A stretch of 16,549 bases of DNA from NCBI GenBank assembly GCA_001179505.1, contig CDMY01000829.1:1-16549 (forward strand), read 5' to 3'. Both the position numbers and the translations under genes were made by a program. Positions 1 to 13,361 of this stretch are shown here, in pieces (the stretch's first letter is position 1; each line of letters opens with the position of its first letter). The notes beneath the pieces are model-generated. The model saw only the letters and a program-made list of their open reading frames with translations. It ran no database searches and was not told the origin of the DNA. The DNA is from Vitrella brassicaformis CCMP3155. Taxonomy: Eukaryota; Protista; Chromerida.

Positions 1-1240
1 AGGCAGACAGAGGGAGGGAGGGAGAGAGAGAGAGAGAGAGGAGATGCTTTCATTGGCACCCATGCTTGTGGTGTGCGCGTGTATCATTTTCTGCAGGTCT
101 GGGTACGATGAAGCTGCAGATGGATTGGATTGGCCTCGATGTGTACGGCCACGTCGGTTACGGCAACTCGTACGCCTTCTACTCGCAGAAACGCAAACTG
201 GCGGTGGTGGGCACTGTCAACAATGAGGGCCGGGGGCTTTGGACTCGCAGCGTGGTGCCCATCCTCGAGGCCGTCGAGGCCTTCCTGCAGCGACACTCGC
301 CGCAGGCCTCTGAGTCATGACTGATATGAATGCAACGTGTGACGTGTGGGCATTTATCTGTCTGTCTGTCTGTCTTTTATTGGTCATTTCTCCAGCGAGG
401 CTGCATGACGCACACACTGACAGACAGGCGGTCGTCAGCCGGTGTGTGTGGCTTGTTGCGTGGCGGGACGGGAGTGTGTGTGTGTGTGTGTGTTTGCGTG
501 TATGTATGTGTCGTTGAAAGGTGTTGCCAGCGCAGCACTTGACATGGATGGCTGGGTGGGACTCTCACCTCCGTGTGGGAGTTAGTTTTGACGGCCCGTG
601 AGCTGCACGAGTTGCATCGCGGGCGGCGTCGGTCGGTGGATTTTTGATCATTGCTATGTTGATAGCATGTGGGTGGACGAACAGTTTTCGGTTATGTGTC
701 TTCAGGACATCATCATTTTGTAGCTTACCAGGTCCCTATCACTTAGCCGGGCACGCAGCAGCTTGTCTCAGTCCGTCGTGCCGCAGAATTGCGTGTCTGT
801 GTGTGTGTGTGTGTGTGTGTATGTGTGTCTGTCCGTTGTTGATGTGAGCGTGTCTGAGTGTATCTGTTTGGGTGCGTTTCTCTGTCTGTCAGTGCGTTTC
901 TGTGTCTGTCTGTCTACTGTGTGTTTATCTGTTTGTGTATGTGTGGCTGATTCAGCCAAAGCGTGTCCTACTCACGCATCGCACGTGCCAAAGGCTGAGG
1001 CGCGGGCATCGATGTGCCTGCCTCGGCCATGCTCTGTGCATGTCGCCAGTCATGTTAGCTGTGTTTGGGAGAGTGGACTATGTGAAACTGCCGTGGGGCA
1101 TTAATTAAGGTGGCTGCTACACGCATCGCAAAGAAGGAGGCTTGGTAATGTCTTCAAGCAAACAGTGCCGATGGCCTGGTGTCGGAACGATTCTGTGCGT
1201 CGAGAGCGGGTGTGTCTGCCACGTGCTGCCGCACACCAAC
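1..1240 (+). repeat. Tandem segmental duplication: 1-~1240 is homologous to 5074-~6273 (last intron, last exon and 3' flank of the hydrolase gene)
   Basis: Direct visual alignment: AGGCAGACAGAGGGAG at 1 and 5074, colinear through GGTGTGTCTGCCACGTGC (~1209-1226 vs 6244-6261). Scattered substitutions, indels and microsatellite length differences; end point approximate. Confidence 0.92.
97..320 (+). CDS. Last exon of beta-lactamase/DD-peptidase-family serine hydrolase, tandem paralog copy A (rest of gene lies upstream of the window)
   Basis: Acceptor TTTTCTGCAG ends at 96. The phase-1 exon reads (G)LGTMKLQMDWIGLDVYGHVGYGNSYAFYSQKRKLAVVGTVNNEGRGLWT...HSPQASES, stop TGA 318-320. Near-identical to exon 7 (5178-5398) of copy B and contains the HxG motif III. 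Confidence 0.88.
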
Positions 1241-2453
1241 CGCATTCACTGAGTTTCCATACCCCATGCGTCAGCAGCGCTCAGATGAGCACGGCAGCCG
1301 CCTCAAGACGCACTTGCAATGGGAAGAATGCCTCTCAGCTCAGGACCAGCTCAGCGATCGCGATGAGCGAATGTTAGAAGCGCAAAAGGAGGAGAGAGAG
1401 CCCTCAGGAGATCTGCAGCAGAGAGGCTCACAAGTGCACTGCCTCATCGCACCACNNNNNNNNNNNNNNNNNNNNNNNNNNNNNNNNNNNNNNNNNNNNN
1501 NNNNNNNNNNNNNNNNNNNNNNNNNNNNNNNNNNNNNNNNNNNNNNNNNNNNNNNNNNNNNNNNNNNNNNNNNNNNNNNNNNNNNNNNNNNNNNNNNNNN
1601 NNNNNNNNNNNNNNNNNNNNNNNNNNNNNNNNNNNNNNNNNNNNNNNNNNNNNNNNNNNNNNNNNNNNNNNNNNNNNNNNNNNNNNNNNNNNNNNNNNNN
1701 NNNNNNNNNNNNNNNNNNNNNNNNNNNNNNNNNNNNNNNNNNNNNNNNNNNNNNNGCAGCTTGTCTCAGTCCGTCGTGCCGCAGAATTGCGTGTCTGTGT
1801 GTGTGTGTGTGTGTGTGTATGTGTGTCTGTCCGTTGTTGATGTGAGCGTGTCTGAGTGTATCTGTTTGGGTGCGTTTCTCTGTCTGTCAGTGCGTTTCTG
1901 TGTCTGTCTGTCTACTGTGTGTTTATCTGTTTGTGTATGTGTGGCTGATTCAGCCAAAGCGTGTCCTACTCACGCATCGCACGTGCCAAAGGCTGAGGCG
2001 CGGGCATCGATGTGCCTGCCTCGGCCATGCTCTGTGCATGTCGCCAGTCATGTTAGCTGTGTTTGGGAGAGTGGACTATGTGAAACTGCCGTGGGGCATT
2101 AATTAAGGTGGCTGCTACACGCATCGCAAAGAAGGAGGCTTGGTAATGTCTTCAAGCAAACAGTGCCGATGGCCTGGTGTCGGAACGATTCTGTGCGTCG
2201 AGAGCGGGTGTGTCTGCCACGTGCTGCCGCACACCAACCGCATTCACTGAGTTTCCATACCCCATGCGTCAGCAGCGCTCAGATGAGCACGGCAGCCGCC
2301 TCAAGACGCACTTGCAATGGGAAGAATGCCTCTCAGCTCAGGACCAGCTCAGCGATCGCGATGAGCGAATGTTAGAAGCGCAAAAGGAGGAGAGAGAGCC
2401 CTCAGGAGATCTGCAGCAGAGAGGCTCACAAGTGCACTGCCTCATCGCACCAC
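758..2453. other. Scaffold gap (300 N, 1456-1755) flanked by an apparently identical 698-bp direct duplicate (758-1455 = 1756-2453); probable unmerged contig overlap
   Basis: Constant offset of 998 in sequence and ORF track (768/1766, 872/1870, 1165/2163). The (GT)11 run has the same length in both copies. Duplicate ends coincide exactly with the gap edges. Confidence 0.9.
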
Positions 2454-3343: not shown

Positions 3344-5398
3344 ATGCCGACAGCCATCGCGTCAGACGGCGCCAGCAAGATGACCAAGCGTGGGGTGAGT
3401 TCTTCTGGGACCACCACCGTGTGCCGCCAGCGCATGTGGAGGTGGCTGGGGGGAGGTGCGGTGGCTGTGGTGCTGACGGTGGTGGTGGTGTTCTTGGCTG
3501 TCTGGCAAACGCGTAAGAGCTGGGAGAGTGGGGACCAGGATGGCAGGGTGGATGAGGGAGATGCGGTGAGGGGCGAGAGTTTGGTTGGGAGTGACACCCT
3601 CCTGCCACAAGTGCTCGAAGAGTTCGTCGTCGAAACCCAGTGCGACTCGCTGTTCGACTGCTGTGACTTCTTCCCGTCCGACAACATCACTGAATCCGCT
3701 GAGGTAGCACCGACGCACACGCACACACGAGTACGGGTTGGAGGATTGTCACCGTGTGGCTGTCTTGCGTGTCTACCTGTCTGTGTGTGGTCTCGCCAGG
3801 CATGCATCGCGCTCTTCAACGCCCTGCAGGTAGATAGAGGCATCACAGACAGTCACACCAGTCACACACAAAGCACCCGCCCAGCTACGCTCACTTCTTG
3901 TGTTTCCTCGTCCCTCAGAAAGTGCTGGACAAACAAGTGCGACGCAACCGCGGCAAGGGTGGCGGCGTCGCGCGCGTCGAGTCCACCGACAAGGGCATCC
4001 TCTGGCAGTCAACCTCCGGCCGCCTGTACGGGGGGGCAGACGCACCCGACATGACCCTTGACACGCTCTTCGAGATCGCCAGCATCACCAAGACCGTCAC
4101 GGCAGCCGTGGTGCTGAAGCTCGTTGAGGCGGGGAGGATCTCTTTGCGGGACGAGGTGGTGGACCTGCTGCCCGACGGTGCGGTTCCCGAGGGCCTGCTG
4201 ACTGTCAACGGGACGGACGGGACGGTCAACCTGACCGTGTGGCACCTGCTGTCGCACCGGGGAGGGCTGCCCGACTTCTGGGACAACTGGAACTTCCTGG
4301 AAGAGTACGACGCCGACCCCAACTATGACTGGACGCCGCAGGAGACCATCGCCTGGGCCGCCGCAATGGACAAGGAATTCCCGCCACAGACGTCAATTAA
4401 GGGTGGGTGGTGATCTCGATGCACACACGAAGGACGATGGAAACATACGCAGTACAGCCGCACACCCGTACAAGAGCTGTGTGCATGATGATGATCAACA
4501 GGCAACTTTGCGTACGGCGACACCAACTATGTGATTTTGGGTCTGCTGGTGGAGCACCTCACCGGCAAGGCGCTCCACAAGGTCTTCAGGGAGGCCATCT
4601 TCGACCCACTGGACATGAACTCCACTTACATGAGCTACAAGGAAGAGCCCAGGTGAGCTGCCCTGACAAACCAGACGACCTGACAAACCACCCACACGCA
4701 TCGGGGGTATGTTTGTGCATGTGTTGGGTCGGCAGGACGGATGCGCCTCTGTCGCACCGGTATGGATATGACTCGGAAGACCTGCACAACGTCACAAGGC
4801 AGGCGGCCGACTGGGCCAGCGGAGGACTCATCAGGTAATGAATACTACACACGAATGACAACCTTGCTGTGTCCCGGCCCCATTGCGTACACCTGCGATG
4901 GTTTCGTATGACTGATGCAGTGACGTGCATGACACGAGCATCTTCATCCGCGGCTTCATGGAGGGCCGCATTATCAGCCCCGACACACTGGCAAACGCCC
5001 TCGACGCGGGGCAGGCAGCTTCCTCCTTCAGCAATGCTGAATGGATCTACTACGGTAAAACGACCACTGACACAGGCAGACAGAGGGAGAGAGAGAGAGA
5101 GAGAGAGAGAGGAGATGCTTTCATTGGCACCCATGCTTGTGGTGTGTGGGTGTGTGCGCGTGTATCACTTTCTGCAGGTCTGGGTACGATGGAGCTGCAG
5201 ATGGATTGGATTGGCCTCGGCTATGTTTACGGCCACGTCGGTTACGGCAACTCGTACGCCTTCTACTCGCAGAAACGCAAACTGGCGGTGGTGGGCACTG
5301 TCAACAATGAGGAGGGGGCTTGGACTCGCAGCGTGGTGCCCATCCTCGAGGCCGTCGAGGCCTTCCTGCAGCGACAGTCACCTGCCTCTGAGTCATAA
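3344..5398 (+). CDS. Type II membrane-anchored beta-lactamase/DD-peptidase-family (PF00144-like) serine hydrolase, copy B, 7 exons, ~492 aa
   Basis: Exons 3344-3703, 3800-3829, 3919-4402, 4502-4652, 4736-4834, 4921-5054, 5178-5398. All introns GT-AG with consistent phases; total 1479 nt. Motifs: FEIA-SITK (SxxK, 4081-4092), LLSHRGGL, YGDTNY (motif II, 4513-4530), WASGGLIS, YYGLG, GHVG (motif III, 5231-5242). Hydrophobic segment at residues 34-54 (3443-3505). Start codon is the least certain part. Confidence 0.88.
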
Positions 5399-6568
5399 CT
5401 GATATGAATGCAACGTGTGACGTGTGGGCATTTATCTGTCTGTCTGTCTGTCTTTTATTGGTCATTTCTCCAGCGAGGCTGCATGACGCACACACTGACA
5501 GACAGGCGGTCGTCAGCCGGTGTGTGTGGCTTGTTGCGTGGCGGGACGGGAGTGTGTGTGTGTGTTTGCGTGTATGTATGTGTCGTTGAAAGGTGTTGCC
5601 AGCGCTCTGAATGGATGGCTGGGTGGGACTCTCACCTCCGTGTGGGAGTTAGTTTTACGGCCCGTGAGCTGCACGAGTTGCATCGCGGGCGGCGTCGGTC
5701 GGTGGATTTTTGATCATTGCTATGTTGATAGCATGTGGGTGGACGAACAGTTTTCGGTTATGTGTCGTCAGGACATCATCATTTTGTAGCTTACCAGGTC
5801 CCTATCACTTAGCCGGGCACGCAGCAGCTTGTCTCAGTCCGTCGTGCCGCAGAATTGCGTGTCTGTGTGTCTGTCCGTTGTTGATGTGAGCGTGTCTGTG
5901 TGTATCTGTTTGGGTGCGTTTCTCTGTCTGTCAGTGCGTTTCTGTGTCTGTCTGTCTACTGTGTGTTTATCTGTTTGTGTATGTGTGGCTGATTCAGCCA
6001 AAGCGTGTCCTACTCACGCATCGCACGTGCCAAAGGCTGAGGCGCGGGCATCGATGTGCCTGCCTCGGCCATGCACTGAGTGTCTGTGCATGTCGCCAGT
6101 CATGTTAGCTGTGTTTGGGAGAGTGGACTATGTGAAACTGCCGTGGGGCATTAATTAAGGTGGCTGCTACACGCATCGCAAAGAAGGAGGCTTGGTTACC
6201 CCTTCAACAGTGCCAATGGCCTGCTGAACGATTCTGTGCGTCCGGTGTGTCTGCCACGTGCAGCCCAGCACCATCCATACATCCTATCCTCGCCCACCTT
6301 GATCACTGTCGCAATGCCTGGACGGCCTTCCGAGAGCTGGAGAATGTGTGTAGGAGGTGGACTGACGAACGCACTGAGGTTTCACCGGAAAGTCCAGAGG
6401 GTAAGCACCAGCCCAGCTGACTCACTGACGACAGGTCCCACCTCCGGTGAAGGCCAGAAGGTATCCTCCAGGCCCAGTCAACCAAGTTTCAACACACTGG
6501 CCGGAAAACGGGAAAATTTACAGAGCCGTTTGCAGTTGTACGGCCCTGGCTTTCCTCGCGCTGCGTGC

Positions 6569-11597: not shown

Positions 11598-13361
11598 TCA
11601 GAAGGATCGGCACTCGAATCGTGTGCCGAGGCACCTGCCGCGCACCGCCAGCACCTGGAACCGCTCGGCTGATATGTCGATGAAACCGTTGTCTATCAAA
11701 CGACCTGCACACGCAACCCAGCACACAGACAGATAGATACATATCGATGAGCCCGCAGTGGATGGATGGATGGATGAGTACGTACCGACGTTGAAGAATA
11801 CGTTTTTGGCTCTGCCGCCCTGCACGCCGAACCTAGTGCCCGGCTGCAGCTGACGATTGCCGTCACTCCCACTGCCACTGCTACCGCTGCCAACACCGCC
11901 ATCATCACCTGACATACACACCATACACAGAAAGCATTTCGTCCATCCACCCACCGCCCCTCTCGGCCTGTCTGTCTGTCTGTCTGGTGTGTTGGATTTG
12001 ATCTGCGCACCTGTGAGTTTGTTGGCGTCTATGTCAAGGCTGGTGTGTCTTATGAGTTTGTTGGCCTCCTCCGTCTTGCCCTCGTTGTATGCGGGGCCCT
12101 TGAAGACCGCCAATGGGGTGGTACGGGACACGTCACCCTTGTCGTACAGATTCGCACCCTCCTGTATGTGTGTGTGTGCAACAAGCCGAGTACTACAACA
12201 GCGCTCTCTGCGTGTGTGTGTACGAGTTAGTCGGGTGCTTACGGGTATCATGGTCATGGTGTCGCCGTTGGCGAAGGCGATCTCGACGATGTGTTTGTCG
12301 GTGTTGCGTGTGACCTCGTTGATCTTGTAGAACTTCTCTAGAGATCAACACGGTCACAAGTTGATCTTGTAGAACTTCACTTGTTCGTACTCGATCTTGT
12401 ACCTATGTGCTCGCCGCTCGACTTGAACTCGAGGTAGAGGGCCTCCACCTTGTAGAGGTCCGCCAGGTCCACCTCGAGCATCTCAAACATACCCAGGCTG
12501 TCCAACGTCTCCTTGGCCGACACATCCACGGCACGACCTGCACACACAACACACACAGACACAGACACAGACACACACAGACACAGAGCATGTGTATGTG
12601 TAATTTGCCCGGGCCCTCTCTCTTTTTTCTCGCTGGTATCGGCTTGTGTGATGCGCCGACCATCGATGGTGGCGACTTCGATGAGGCGGCCATCCTTGTC
12701 GGGCCTGAAGTCTTTTGAGATCTCGTTGGCGCCCAGACAGACGCCCAAGAAGATGGCCAGCGTCGCAAGATACAGCAGCGCGATGCCCGCCAGTATCACC
12801 GACAAATGGCGGGACCGACGCTGCTCCTGCTGCAACGCACGAGCCGCACGCGCCACGTCCTCGATGCTGAACTTGCCTGGTTGGTACACATACACATAAC
12901 AAGCCAGAGAGCAGAAATCGTCTCTCTGTCGCTCTCTCACCATCACACCCCTCCCTCCCCTGCTCACCATCGCCATCTGAGTCCCATGACTTGAGCACAC
13001 GCACGAGCAGGTCCGAGTCGCCGCCCCGCCCCCCGCCCGTGATGGTCACAGCAGCCCGCCGGAAGTTCTCTGTCCGGTTGGTGGGGATACCGCTGCTGCC
13101 ATTGGGGCTGAAACCGTCCACACCACCACCACCGCCGCCGCCGAACCGCAGATGGTGTGTGGCAGGGGGAAGGGCCAGCTTGGGCACGGGTGTGTTGGTG
13201 TTGGTATTGGTGCCGAGCTTGGATGGCGGGGCGGACGAGGACGACATACTCGACGGCGATGTCTGCTCGCCGAAGTGGGGCGTCGGCTGCTGTGTGGCTG
13301 TGGCTGTGAGGGAGAAGAGCTTGGGAATGGGGAAGCCGAAGCTGCGAACGGCTTCACTCAT
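11598..13361 (-). CDS. Uncharacterised single-pass membrane protein with N-terminal low-complexity region and one EF-hand, 7 exons, ~406 aa
   Basis: Exons (minus) 13361-12968, 12876-12661, 12537-12403, 12337-12243, 12161-12011, 11908-11786, 11704-11598. GT-AG introns with consistent phases; total 1221 nt. Splicing exons 1-2 creates the EF-hand loop DSDGDGKFSIED, followed by a short helical stretch and the TM LSVILAGIALLYLATLAIFLGVCLGA. The intron 12402-12338 is atypical (see findings). Confidence 0.75.
12338..12402 (-). other. Putative 65-nt intron made largely of direct and inverted copies of the adjacent exon
   Basis: Minus strand GTACAAG...GATCTCTAG. Removal joins EHI-E-KFYKINEVTR in frame; retention gives a stop at 12379-12377. 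19-bp direct repeat at 12318-12336 and 12360-12378; inverted copy 12338-12358 of 12309-12330. Confidence 0.6.

What the first reader, a model, noticed from the sequence alone, without database searches (positions are those of the whole stretch)
12309..12402. Candidate intron birth: a 65-nt intron assembled from direct and inverted copies of its downstream exon
Seen (minus strand): GTACAAGATCGAG-TACGAACAAGT-GAAGTTCTACAAGATCAAC-TTGTGACCGTGTTGATCTCTAG|AG-AAGTTCTACAAGATCAACGAGGTCACA. It holds a perfect 19-bp copy of the exon start (12360-12378 = 12318-12336), a 9-bp copy (12393-12401), and an inverted copy (12338-12358) matching 12309-12330 at about 18 of 22 positions. The inverted copy supplies the TAG acceptor, which sits at the stem-loop boundary of a roughly 21-bp hairpin. 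It has no microsatellite, unlike most introns here. Splicing restores the frame; retention stops the protein at 12377. Established: forward-inverted-forward templated insertions are typical of polymerase-theta end joining and short-range template switching, and break repair is a proposed route of intron gain. Inference: a recent repair scar rescued by splicing, possibly with structure-dependent splicing; alternatively an inactivating lesion.
Basis: partly seen in the sequence, partly recalled or inferred. Interest (0 to 1): 0.75.

Follow-up and report, generated by a model that had tools for sequence, protein, structure and literature searches.

The report
Young intron built from neighbouring exon
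A 65-base interruption in a Vitrella brassicaformis gene is made mostly of forward and backward copies of the next 30 bases of coding sequence and can be cut out exactly as an intron, so it looks like an intron caught soon after its birth, but nobody has yet shown that the cell splices it.

Summary
The window is a whole 16,549-nt scaffold of Vitrella brassicaformis CCMP3155. On the minus strand, 12402-12338 is a GT..AG interval in gene CEM34605.1. It holds an exact 19-nt direct copy, a 9-nt direct copy and a 15/17 inverted copy of the start of the next exon. These copies cover 46 of its 65 nt, which none of 20,000 shuffles reached.

The public protein model removes exactly this interval. The result is GEHIEKFYK, the same peptide as in a paralog. 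Eight paralogs, including the two nearest on the tree, have no intron at this site. One distant paralog has an unrelated intron 7 nt upstream. The insert is single-copy, so it is not a mobile element.

Six paralogs carry 35 introns at 33 different positions, so intron gain has been common in this family.

Against a working intron:
- the donor is weak (GTACAA);
- a predicted 20-bp hairpin covers the acceptor;
- no transcript-derived protein of this gene exists in the databases, although five paralogs have one.

Splicing, age and the enzyme involved are all untested. My verdict is a probable lineage-specific intron gain by local templated DNA synthesis (about 0.6). The main rival is an unspliced inactivating insertion (about 0.25). 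It would be a new variant of a known kind.

The parts
11601..13361 (-). Coding region of gene CEM34605.1 / A0A0G4GVA2 (P0001, 406 aa). It has an EF-hand motif, one membrane span and a conserved C-terminal domain with no Pfam family. It has seven exons.
   Evidence: Found by protein search; sequence; accession. Exact spliced mapping of the public protein on the window gives exons 13361-12968, 12876-12661, 12537-12403, 12337-12243, 12161-12011, 11908-11786 and 11704-11601. No Pfam match for the ectodomain.
12403..12537 (-). Exon 3. It ends ..GAGCACATAG, with the first base of the Glu249 codon as its last base.
12338..12402 (-). The candidate intron: 65 nt, GT..AG, phase 1, the shortest of the gene's six introns.
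   Evidence: Single-copy in the 72.7-Mb genome.
12393..12401 (-). 9-nt direct copy (TACAAGATC) of exon 4 positions 12321-12329. Together with the preceding G it forms the donor GTACAA.
   Evidence: The donor scores 0.3 bits, second weakest of 21.
12379..12392 (-). 14 nt with no clear local template. It may be a copy of GTACGACAAG in exon 5 (12147-12138) with a 1-nt indel. The in-frame TGA met on intron retention (12377-12379) overlaps the last base of this stretch.
   Evidence: the exon-5 source is a post hoc guess.
12360..12378 (-). 19-nt exact direct copy of the start of exon 4 (12318-12336).
12338..12358 (-). Inverted copy of exon 4 positions 12309-12325 (15/17). It runs on into CTAG, which supplies the acceptor.
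   Evidence: I1; (pieces 12352-12358, 12342-12349, 12339-12344)
12335..12344 (.). 10-nt perfect palindrome TCTCTAGAGA centred on the 3' splice site.
   Evidence: read; one search shows TCTCTA is the reverse complement of the pre-insertion junction TAGAGA.
12309..12358 (-). Predicted 20-bp hairpin (7+9+4 bp, 5-nt loop). It pairs the 3' end of the intron with the start of exon 4 and encloses the acceptor AG.
12243..12337 (-). Exon 4. Its first 29 nt (12309-12337) are the template for the copies in the intron.

Best explanation
The 65 nt are a real insertion that arose in the lineage of this one gene, after it split from its nearest paralogs.

Inferred origin: a break or a stalled replication fork occurred at the codons for Glu-Lys-Phe-Tyr (GAG AAG TTC TAC), which carry a small inverted repeat of their own. 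A DNA end then primed several short rounds of synthesis on nearby sequence. One round copied the opposite strand, giving the inverted copy next to its template. At least two rounds copied the same strand, giving the 19-nt and 9-nt direct copies. A short unexplained filler lies between them.

Shown: the product begins with GT, ends with AG and has TAG on both borders, so the spliceosome can remove it exactly. Removal gives back the original reading frame and the conserved peptide.

Inferred function: it now acts as a young, weak GT-AG intron.

Shown: the anatomy, the absence of an intron at this site in relatives, the single-copy status and the exact restoration of the peptide. Inferred: the break, the polymerase, the order of the copying steps and the splicing itself.
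For: - Repeat anatomy and its non-randomness.
- The borders are GT/AG, and removal gives GEHIEKFYKINEVTRN, as in the public model. The paralog P0002 reads GEHIEKFYKVAEITRN.
- Eight paralogs have an uninterrupted reading frame across the site: C259, C802, C543, C1040, C260, C584, C821 and C964.
- On the tree, P0001 is sister (94/91) to C259+C802, followed by C543+C1040. One gain is therefore simpler than two or more losses.
- Both intron borders are themselves made of exon-derived sequence, which a remodelled old intron would not show.
- The insert occurs nowhere else in the genome.
- The copies are imperfect and there is a unique filler, which an assembler would not invent.
- Gains are common in this family: 35 introns sit at 33 positions in six paralogs, and two transcript-verified paralogs (P0120, P0003) share no position.
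- The other six exons are intact, with canonical splice sites.
- The length of 65 nt lies within the family's range of 56-147 nt.
- The sister paralog has an independent 9-nt tandem duplication at the same spot, so the site is prone to slippage.
Against: - There is no RNA evidence.
- The public model comes from Augustus. RNA-seq was used only as hints, and 5,263 of the 23,503 predicted genes had no detected expression (PMC4501334).
- No transcript-derived protein of this gene turned up in MMETSP, JGI or Logan. Paralogs P0003, P0120, P0008, P0014 and P0015 do have MMETSP transcripts.
- The donor lacks the usual G at +5 and is second weakest of 21.
- The hairpin (z = -5) buries the acceptor and a likely branch site.
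- There is no ortholog outside Vitrella closer than 39% identity, so absence of the intron is shown only in paralogs.
- Age cannot be fixed. If the few mismatches arose during synthesis, the intact reading frame says nothing about selection.
Confidence: 0.6

Rival explanations
1. Inactivating lesion. The same templated insertion is real but is not spliced, or only rarely. Transcripts then stop at TGA 12379-12377. The gene is a fresh pseudogene, or a dispensable member of a large family, and the gene predictor merely found a GT..AG pair that hides the damage.
For: - Weak donor.
- Strong hairpin over the acceptor.
- No transcript-derived protein for this gene, while five paralogs have one.
- The model is an Augustus prediction.
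- Many paralogs could cover a loss.
Against: - An insertion whose borders happen to be GT and AG in a register that restores the exact conserved peptide is expected in only about 1-2% of random insertions (my estimate from base frequencies and four sliding registers).
- All other exons and splice sites are intact.
- Similarly weak donors (GTATAC, GTAGCC) occur in annotated family introns.
Confidence: 0.25
2. Old intron, new filling. An intron already sat at this position, and a later repair event replaced its interior with copies of the exon.
For: - All six introns of this gene are absent from the sister paralog, so lineage-specific introns of unknown age are the rule here.
- A distant paralog has an intron 7 nt upstream.
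Against: - Both borders, including the donor and the acceptor, are themselves exon-derived, so nothing of an older intron is left.
- The interval has none of the microsatellite tracts, and not the 52-54% GC, of the gene's other introns.
- It has no similarity to the P0002 intron (score 12 against a shuffle mean of 13.4).
- A 7-nt shift with an unchanged peptide cannot come from simple sliding.
Confidence: 0.07
3. Assembly or library artefact. The 65 nt are not in the genome.
For: Short local direct and inverted repeats can confuse short-read assembly. I could not inspect reads.
Against: - The copies are imperfect and are joined by a unique 14-nt filler.
- The site lies about 4 kb from the scaffold end.
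- The borders are exact GT/AG in the frame-restoring register.
Confidence: 0.05
4. Mobile intron-like element (introner or miniature transposon) inserted with a TAG target duplication.
For: There is a 3-nt TAG on both borders, and the region contains an inverted repeat.
Against: - The insert is single-copy in the genome.
- The partner of the inverted repeat lies in the exon, not at the other end of the insert.
- 71% of the insert is a copy of the adjacent 40 nt.
Confidence: 0.02

Closest known systems
Intron gain during double-strand-break repair, as in Daphnia pulex neointrons (PMC4202315; PMC3020277; review PMC3443670)
   Same: A short insert (65 nt here; Daphnia mean 77.7 nt) sits in a previously continuous exon. 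A short direct repeat marks the two borders (TAG here; 4-12 bp in Daphnia). The insert is more AT-rich than the exons. The spliced message is unchanged.
   Different: The papers I read do not trace Daphnia inserts to a local template. Here 46 of 65 nt are copies of the adjacent 40 nt on both strands. Daphnia gains are backed by cDNA and by presence/absence polymorphism, and this one by neither.
Intron gain by tandem duplication of an exon segment containing AGGT (listed among the models in PMC3443670)
   Same: The intron contains a direct copy of neighbouring exon sequence, and splicing leaves the protein unchanged.
   Different: The splice sites do not come from a duplicated AGGT. The copy does not reach the intron borders. 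There is an inverted copy and a filler.
Templated insertions of polymerase-theta end joining, and short-range template-switch mutations (established knowledge; the Schimmel 2019 review is cited in PMC8469720)
   Same: There are forward and inverted copies of sequence within tens of bases of the junction. The inverted copy lies next to its template, as in snap-back synthesis. Short shared bases occur at the joins (TAG, TCT, GTTG).
   Different: These are general mutation signatures. In the searchable library I found no paper linking them to the birth of an intron. Polymerase theta has not been shown in Vitrella.
Introners and symmetrical proliferating introns (fungal sister stwintrons, PMC8469720; Amoebophrya intronic elements, PMC7789003, title and abstract only)
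   Same: A young intron with inverted-repeat structure and a seamless fit into an exon.
   Different: Those are multi-copy families whose inverted repeats lie at the two ends of the element. This insert is single-copy and pairs with its own exon.

Membership tests
U2-type GT-AG spliceosomal intron | GT at the 5' end and AG at the 3' end | tested here: met
   GT 12402-12401, AG 12339-12338
U2-type GT-AG spliceosomal intron | Removal restores the reading frame and the conserved protein sequence | tested here: met
   The exact spliced mapping of the public protein uses these borders. The peptide GEHIEKFYK is identical to that of paralog P0002.
U2-type GT-AG spliceosomal intron | Splice signals comparable to other introns of the organism | tested here: inconclusive
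   The donor scores 0.3 bits, second weakest of 21. The acceptor scores 3.7 bits, in the lower half of the range. The sample is only 21 introns. A possible branch site GTGAC lies 16 nt from the AG (read).
U2-type GT-AG spliceosomal intron | Removed from the transcript | not testable with these tools
Lineage-specific (gained) intron | Absent at the homologous site in the nearest relatives | tested here: met
   Absent in eight paralogs, including the sister pair C259/C802. This is shown only in paralogs, because no close ortholog exists in the databases.
Lineage-specific (gained) intron | Presence/absence polymorphism, or absence in sister strains or species | not testable with these tools
   The metagenome scan was empty, and no second Vitrella genome was available to these tools.
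Tandem-duplication intron (AGGT model) | The intron's 5' end equals the downstream exon's start, and its 3' end equals the upstream exon's end | tested here: not met
   Only TAG is shared at the 3' end. The intron starts GTACAAG while the exon starts AGAAGTT.
Introner / transposon-derived intron | Many similar copies in the genome | tested here: not met
   The only matches are the insert itself and the adjacent exon copy. A 601-nt query found only microsatellite matches.
Templated insertion of end joining / template switching | Insert traceable to nearby sequence in direct and inverted orientation | tested here: met
   46/65 nt trace to a 40-nt template, and none of 20,000 shuffles matched this.
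Templated insertion of end joining / template switching | A polymerase-theta-type enzyme is present in the organism | tested here: inconclusive
   The genome has six or more family-A polymerase loci. The three I checked match bacterial-type Pol I or apicoplast PREX best. The other three were not checked.

The most novel reading that the evidence does not exclude
Vitrella is in an active phase of intron gain. Short fold-back or templated insertions at hairpin-prone codons seed new introns, which later lose their exon-like sequence and fill up with microsatellites. This intron is the youngest visible stage of that process. Recurrent breakage at the same spots would explain why paralogs carry introns a few bases apart: 13 pairs lie within 1-7 nt against 5.9 expected, including the intron 7 nt upstream in P0002 and the 9-nt duplication at the same site in the sister gene.
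Probability: 0.15. Interest if true: 0.85.

Novelty: new variant of a known kind. Interest (0 to 1): 0.6.

Why it matters
How new spliceosomal introns arise is an old open question. Cases where the source of the intron's sequence can still be read are rare. Here more than two thirds of the intron can be traced base by base to the next 30-40 nt of its own exon, on both strands. That points to local error-prone copying at a break or fork, not to a mobile element.

The gene family around it shows almost complete turnover of intron positions among paralogs. Vitrella may therefore be a workable system for studying intron gain. Existing public reads could settle within a day whether this intron is spliced. 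If it is not spliced, the case is an ordinary disabling insertion that a gene predictor papered over.

Tried and rejected
- DNA paralogs: a 601-nt query and the 65-nt insert found only microsatellites and the insert itself. This rejects a mobile element or gene conversion from elsewhere.
- Protein family scan: no family for the ectodomain.
- Transcript-derived proteins: three word searches and two cluster look-ups found nothing for this gene.
- Metagenome scan with the protein: no relative found. A second scan would have repeated the same peptides, so I did not run it.
- Sliding of the P0002 intron: rejected. The peptide is unchanged across a 7-nt, phase-changing offset, and the two introns share no similarity.
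- Classical tandem duplication: rejected (see the membership test).
- Polymerase theta: three of six family-A polymerase loci were checked and none is theta-like. I left it at that.
- Search for the spliced exon3-exon4 junction as DNA or peptide in public collections: left out. I used a joined 40-nt junction only inside local scripts, to trace templates.

Full report
**What the window is.** The genome has 72.7 Mb in 1064 contigs. A protein search with the upstream open frame returned one exact hit, CEM34605.1 / A0A0G4GVA2 of Vitrella brassicaformis CCMP3155. It has 406 aa and is labelled an EF-hand domain-containing protein. Its only contig is 16,549 nt long, so the window is the whole scaffold.

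I mapped this protein exactly onto the minus strand. It has seven exons: 13361-12968, 12876-12661, 12537-12403, 12337-12243, 12161-12011, 11908-11786 and 11704-11601. The introns are 91, 123, 65, 81, 102 and 81 nt long. The finding is intron 3, at 12402-12338.

**The observation.**
- The 19-nt exact direct copy is 12360-12378 = 12318-12336 (22 nt at 95%).
- The 9-nt copy is 12393-12401 = 12321-12329.
- The inverted copy is 12342-12358 against 12309-12325, 15 of 17.
- RNA folding gives a 20-bp hairpin (7+9+4 bp, 5-nt loop) that pairs the 3' end of the intron with the start of exon 4 and encloses the acceptor. Its z-score is -5.0, or -3.8 as DNA.
- A perfect 10-nt palindrome, TCTCTAGAGA (12335-12344), is centred on the splice site.
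- Read-through stops at TGA 12379-12377.

Exact matches of 6 nt or more to a 40-nt template around the junction cover 46 of the 65 nt, and none of 20,000 shuffles reached this. Among 21 annotated introns of three family genes, this is the only one with more than 11 nt of a flanking exon.

It has no tandem-repeat array, whereas introns 2, 5 and 6 do. Its GC content is 0.42, against 0.52-0.54 for the other introns and 0.61 for the coding sequence.

**Is it an intron?** It starts with GT and ends with AG. Removing it gives ..SSGEHIEKFYKINEVTRN.., which is what the public model reads. The paralog on contig C311 (P0002) reads ..LAGEHIEKFYKVAEITRN.., so removal restores a conserved peptide with no residue lost or added. 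The exon ends in TAG and so does the insert, which gives a 3-nt direct repeat at the borders.

The evidence against splicing is as follows.
- The donor GTACAA lacks the G at +5 that 18 of the 21 family introns have. It scores 0.3 bits, second weakest, while the acceptor is in the lower half of the range.
- The hairpin covers the acceptor and a possible branch site.
- The public model is an Augustus prediction. RNA-seq served only as hints, and 18,240 of 23,503 predicted genes were detected as expressed (PMC4501334).
- No transcript-derived protein of this gene is in the protein collections, although paralogs P0003, P0120, P0008, P0014 and P0015 have MMETSP transcripts.

Splicing is therefore plausible but unproven.

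**Is it derived?** The gene belongs to a family with 118 representatives at E<0.001. Most are Vitrella paralogs. There are also one Alphamonas member, one Chromera member and some environmental members. Nothing outside Vitrella is closer than 39% identity, so only paralogs can be compared.

The reading frame is uninterrupted across the homologous site in C259, C802, C543, C1040, C260, C584, C821 and C964. On a maximum-likelihood tree, P0001 is sister (94/91) to C259+C802, followed by C543+C1040, with C311 outermost in the clade.

C311 has an intron 7 nt upstream, in phase 0, between Glu and His. The peptide is the same in both genes, the phases differ and the two introns share no similarity (score 12 against a shuffle mean of 13.4). 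They are therefore not the same intron shifted along. One gain on the P0001 branch is the simplest reading. That branch is long (0.52 changes per site), so the tree does not date the event.

**Family context.** Six paralogs mapped exactly to their loci carry 35 introns at 33 distinct alignment positions. Only two positions are shared. P0001 shares none of its six introns with its sister P0120. P0120 and P0003, both confirmed by identical MMETSP proteins, share none either. A loss-only history would need more than 30 introns in about 1.2 kb, so many gains must have happened since these genes duplicated.

Pairs of introns 1-7 nt apart are about twice as common as under random placement (13 against 5.9, P about 0.01). 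The sister gene C259 has an independent 9-nt tandem duplication (Ile-Glu-Lys twice) at exactly this spot. The site looks prone to slippage or breakage.

**How it was probably made.** The inverted copy lies directly next to its template with a short loop. That is what a DNA end produces when it folds back or switches strands and primes on itself. The direct copies need synthesis on the other strand or on a sister molecule.

The pieces are, in order:
- the 9-nt direct copy;
- 14 nt of filler, possibly from GTACGACAAG in exon 5 at 12147-12138 with one extra base (a post hoc guess);
- the 19-nt direct copy;
- one T;
- inverted pieces 12352-12358, 12342-12349 and 12339-12344, which overlap by 3 nt.

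The two mismatches in the inverted arm can also be read as a jump through a second CAAC-containing template (12301-12306). If so, there are no post-insertion mismatches and no basis for dating. The 19/19 identity only bounds neutral divergence to roughly below 0.12 per site (my estimate).

This pattern fits both polymerase-theta end joining and replication template switching, and I cannot tell them apart. The genome has six or more family-A polymerase loci. The three I checked look like Pol I or PREX, not theta.

**Rivals.**
- Unspliced lesion (0.25). This fits the weak donor, the hairpin and the missing transcripts. It has to accept as coincidence that the borders are GT and AG in the register that restores the peptide, which I estimate at 1-2% for a random insert.
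- Old intron with new filling (0.07). This is unlikely because both borders are themselves exon-derived.
- Assembly artefact (0.05). This is unlikely given the imperfect copies, the unique filler and the position 4 kb from the scaffold end.
- Mobile element (0.02). This is excluded by the single-copy status.

**Known mechanisms.** The case combines features of intron gain by break repair (Daphnia; PMC4202315, PMC3020277) and of the tandem-duplication model (PMC3443670). It meets the defining test of neither pure model. The library searches found no paper that links templated insertions or template switching to intron birth. The nearest is a fungal study of symmetrical proliferating introns, which invokes microhomology-mediated end joining and polymerase theta for deletions inside introns, not for their origin (PMC8469720).

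**Limits.**
- No reads could be inspected.
- The search for the joined exon3-exon4 junction in public collections was left out.

**Verdict.** This is a real and highly non-random structure. It is most likely a lineage-specific intron gain by local templated synthesis, and a new variant of a known kind. Confidence that it works as an intron is 0.6, and interest is 0.6.

Noticed in passing
P0001, P0120, P0003, P0121, P0002, P0009 (window; L028, L057, L035, L012, L017): Six paralogs of this family carry 35 introns at 33 different positions. Sister genes share none. Pairs 1-7 nt apart are about twice as frequent as under random placement (13 against 5.9, P about 0.01).
   Followed up: partly
L014:1573-1600 (contig C259): The sister paralog has a 9-nt tandem duplication (ATCGAGAAG / ATTGAGAAG, Ile-Glu-Lys twice) at exactly the site where the window's gene has its 65-nt insert.
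   Followed up: no
window 758-1157 and 1756-2155; window 1-2200 and 5080-6210: There is a 998-nt tandem repeat with 100% identical copies, which is either a recent duplication or an assembly artefact. There is also a second copy of the first 1.2 kb or so, about 5.07 kb downstream, at 78-99% identity.
   Followed up: no
L012:2372-2489 (P0002 intron 7): This 118-nt intron holds an 11-nt inverted copy of its upstream exon. It is the next-best exon-derived match among the 21 introns checked, but it is not significant after allowing for the number of tests.
   Followed up: no
P0011 (CEM34006.1, contig C802): The public model joins a family domain that lacks the EF-hand and membrane span to about 400 aa named 'Oxidation resistance protein 1'. 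It may be a fused or mis-joined gene model.
   Followed up: no
P0012 (contig C420 end) and P0122 (JGI): The Vitrella model is cut off at the end of its contig at 172 aa. A JGI sequence on a contig of about 2 kb has an identical start and continues to 343 aa. This suggests that transcript-like Vitrella sequences sit in a JGI data set.
   Followed up: no
window 12138-12147: GTACGACAAG in exon 5 resembles the otherwise unexplained filler of the intron (GTACGAACAAG) except for one extra base. It is a possible third template about 190 nt from the junction.
   Followed up: no
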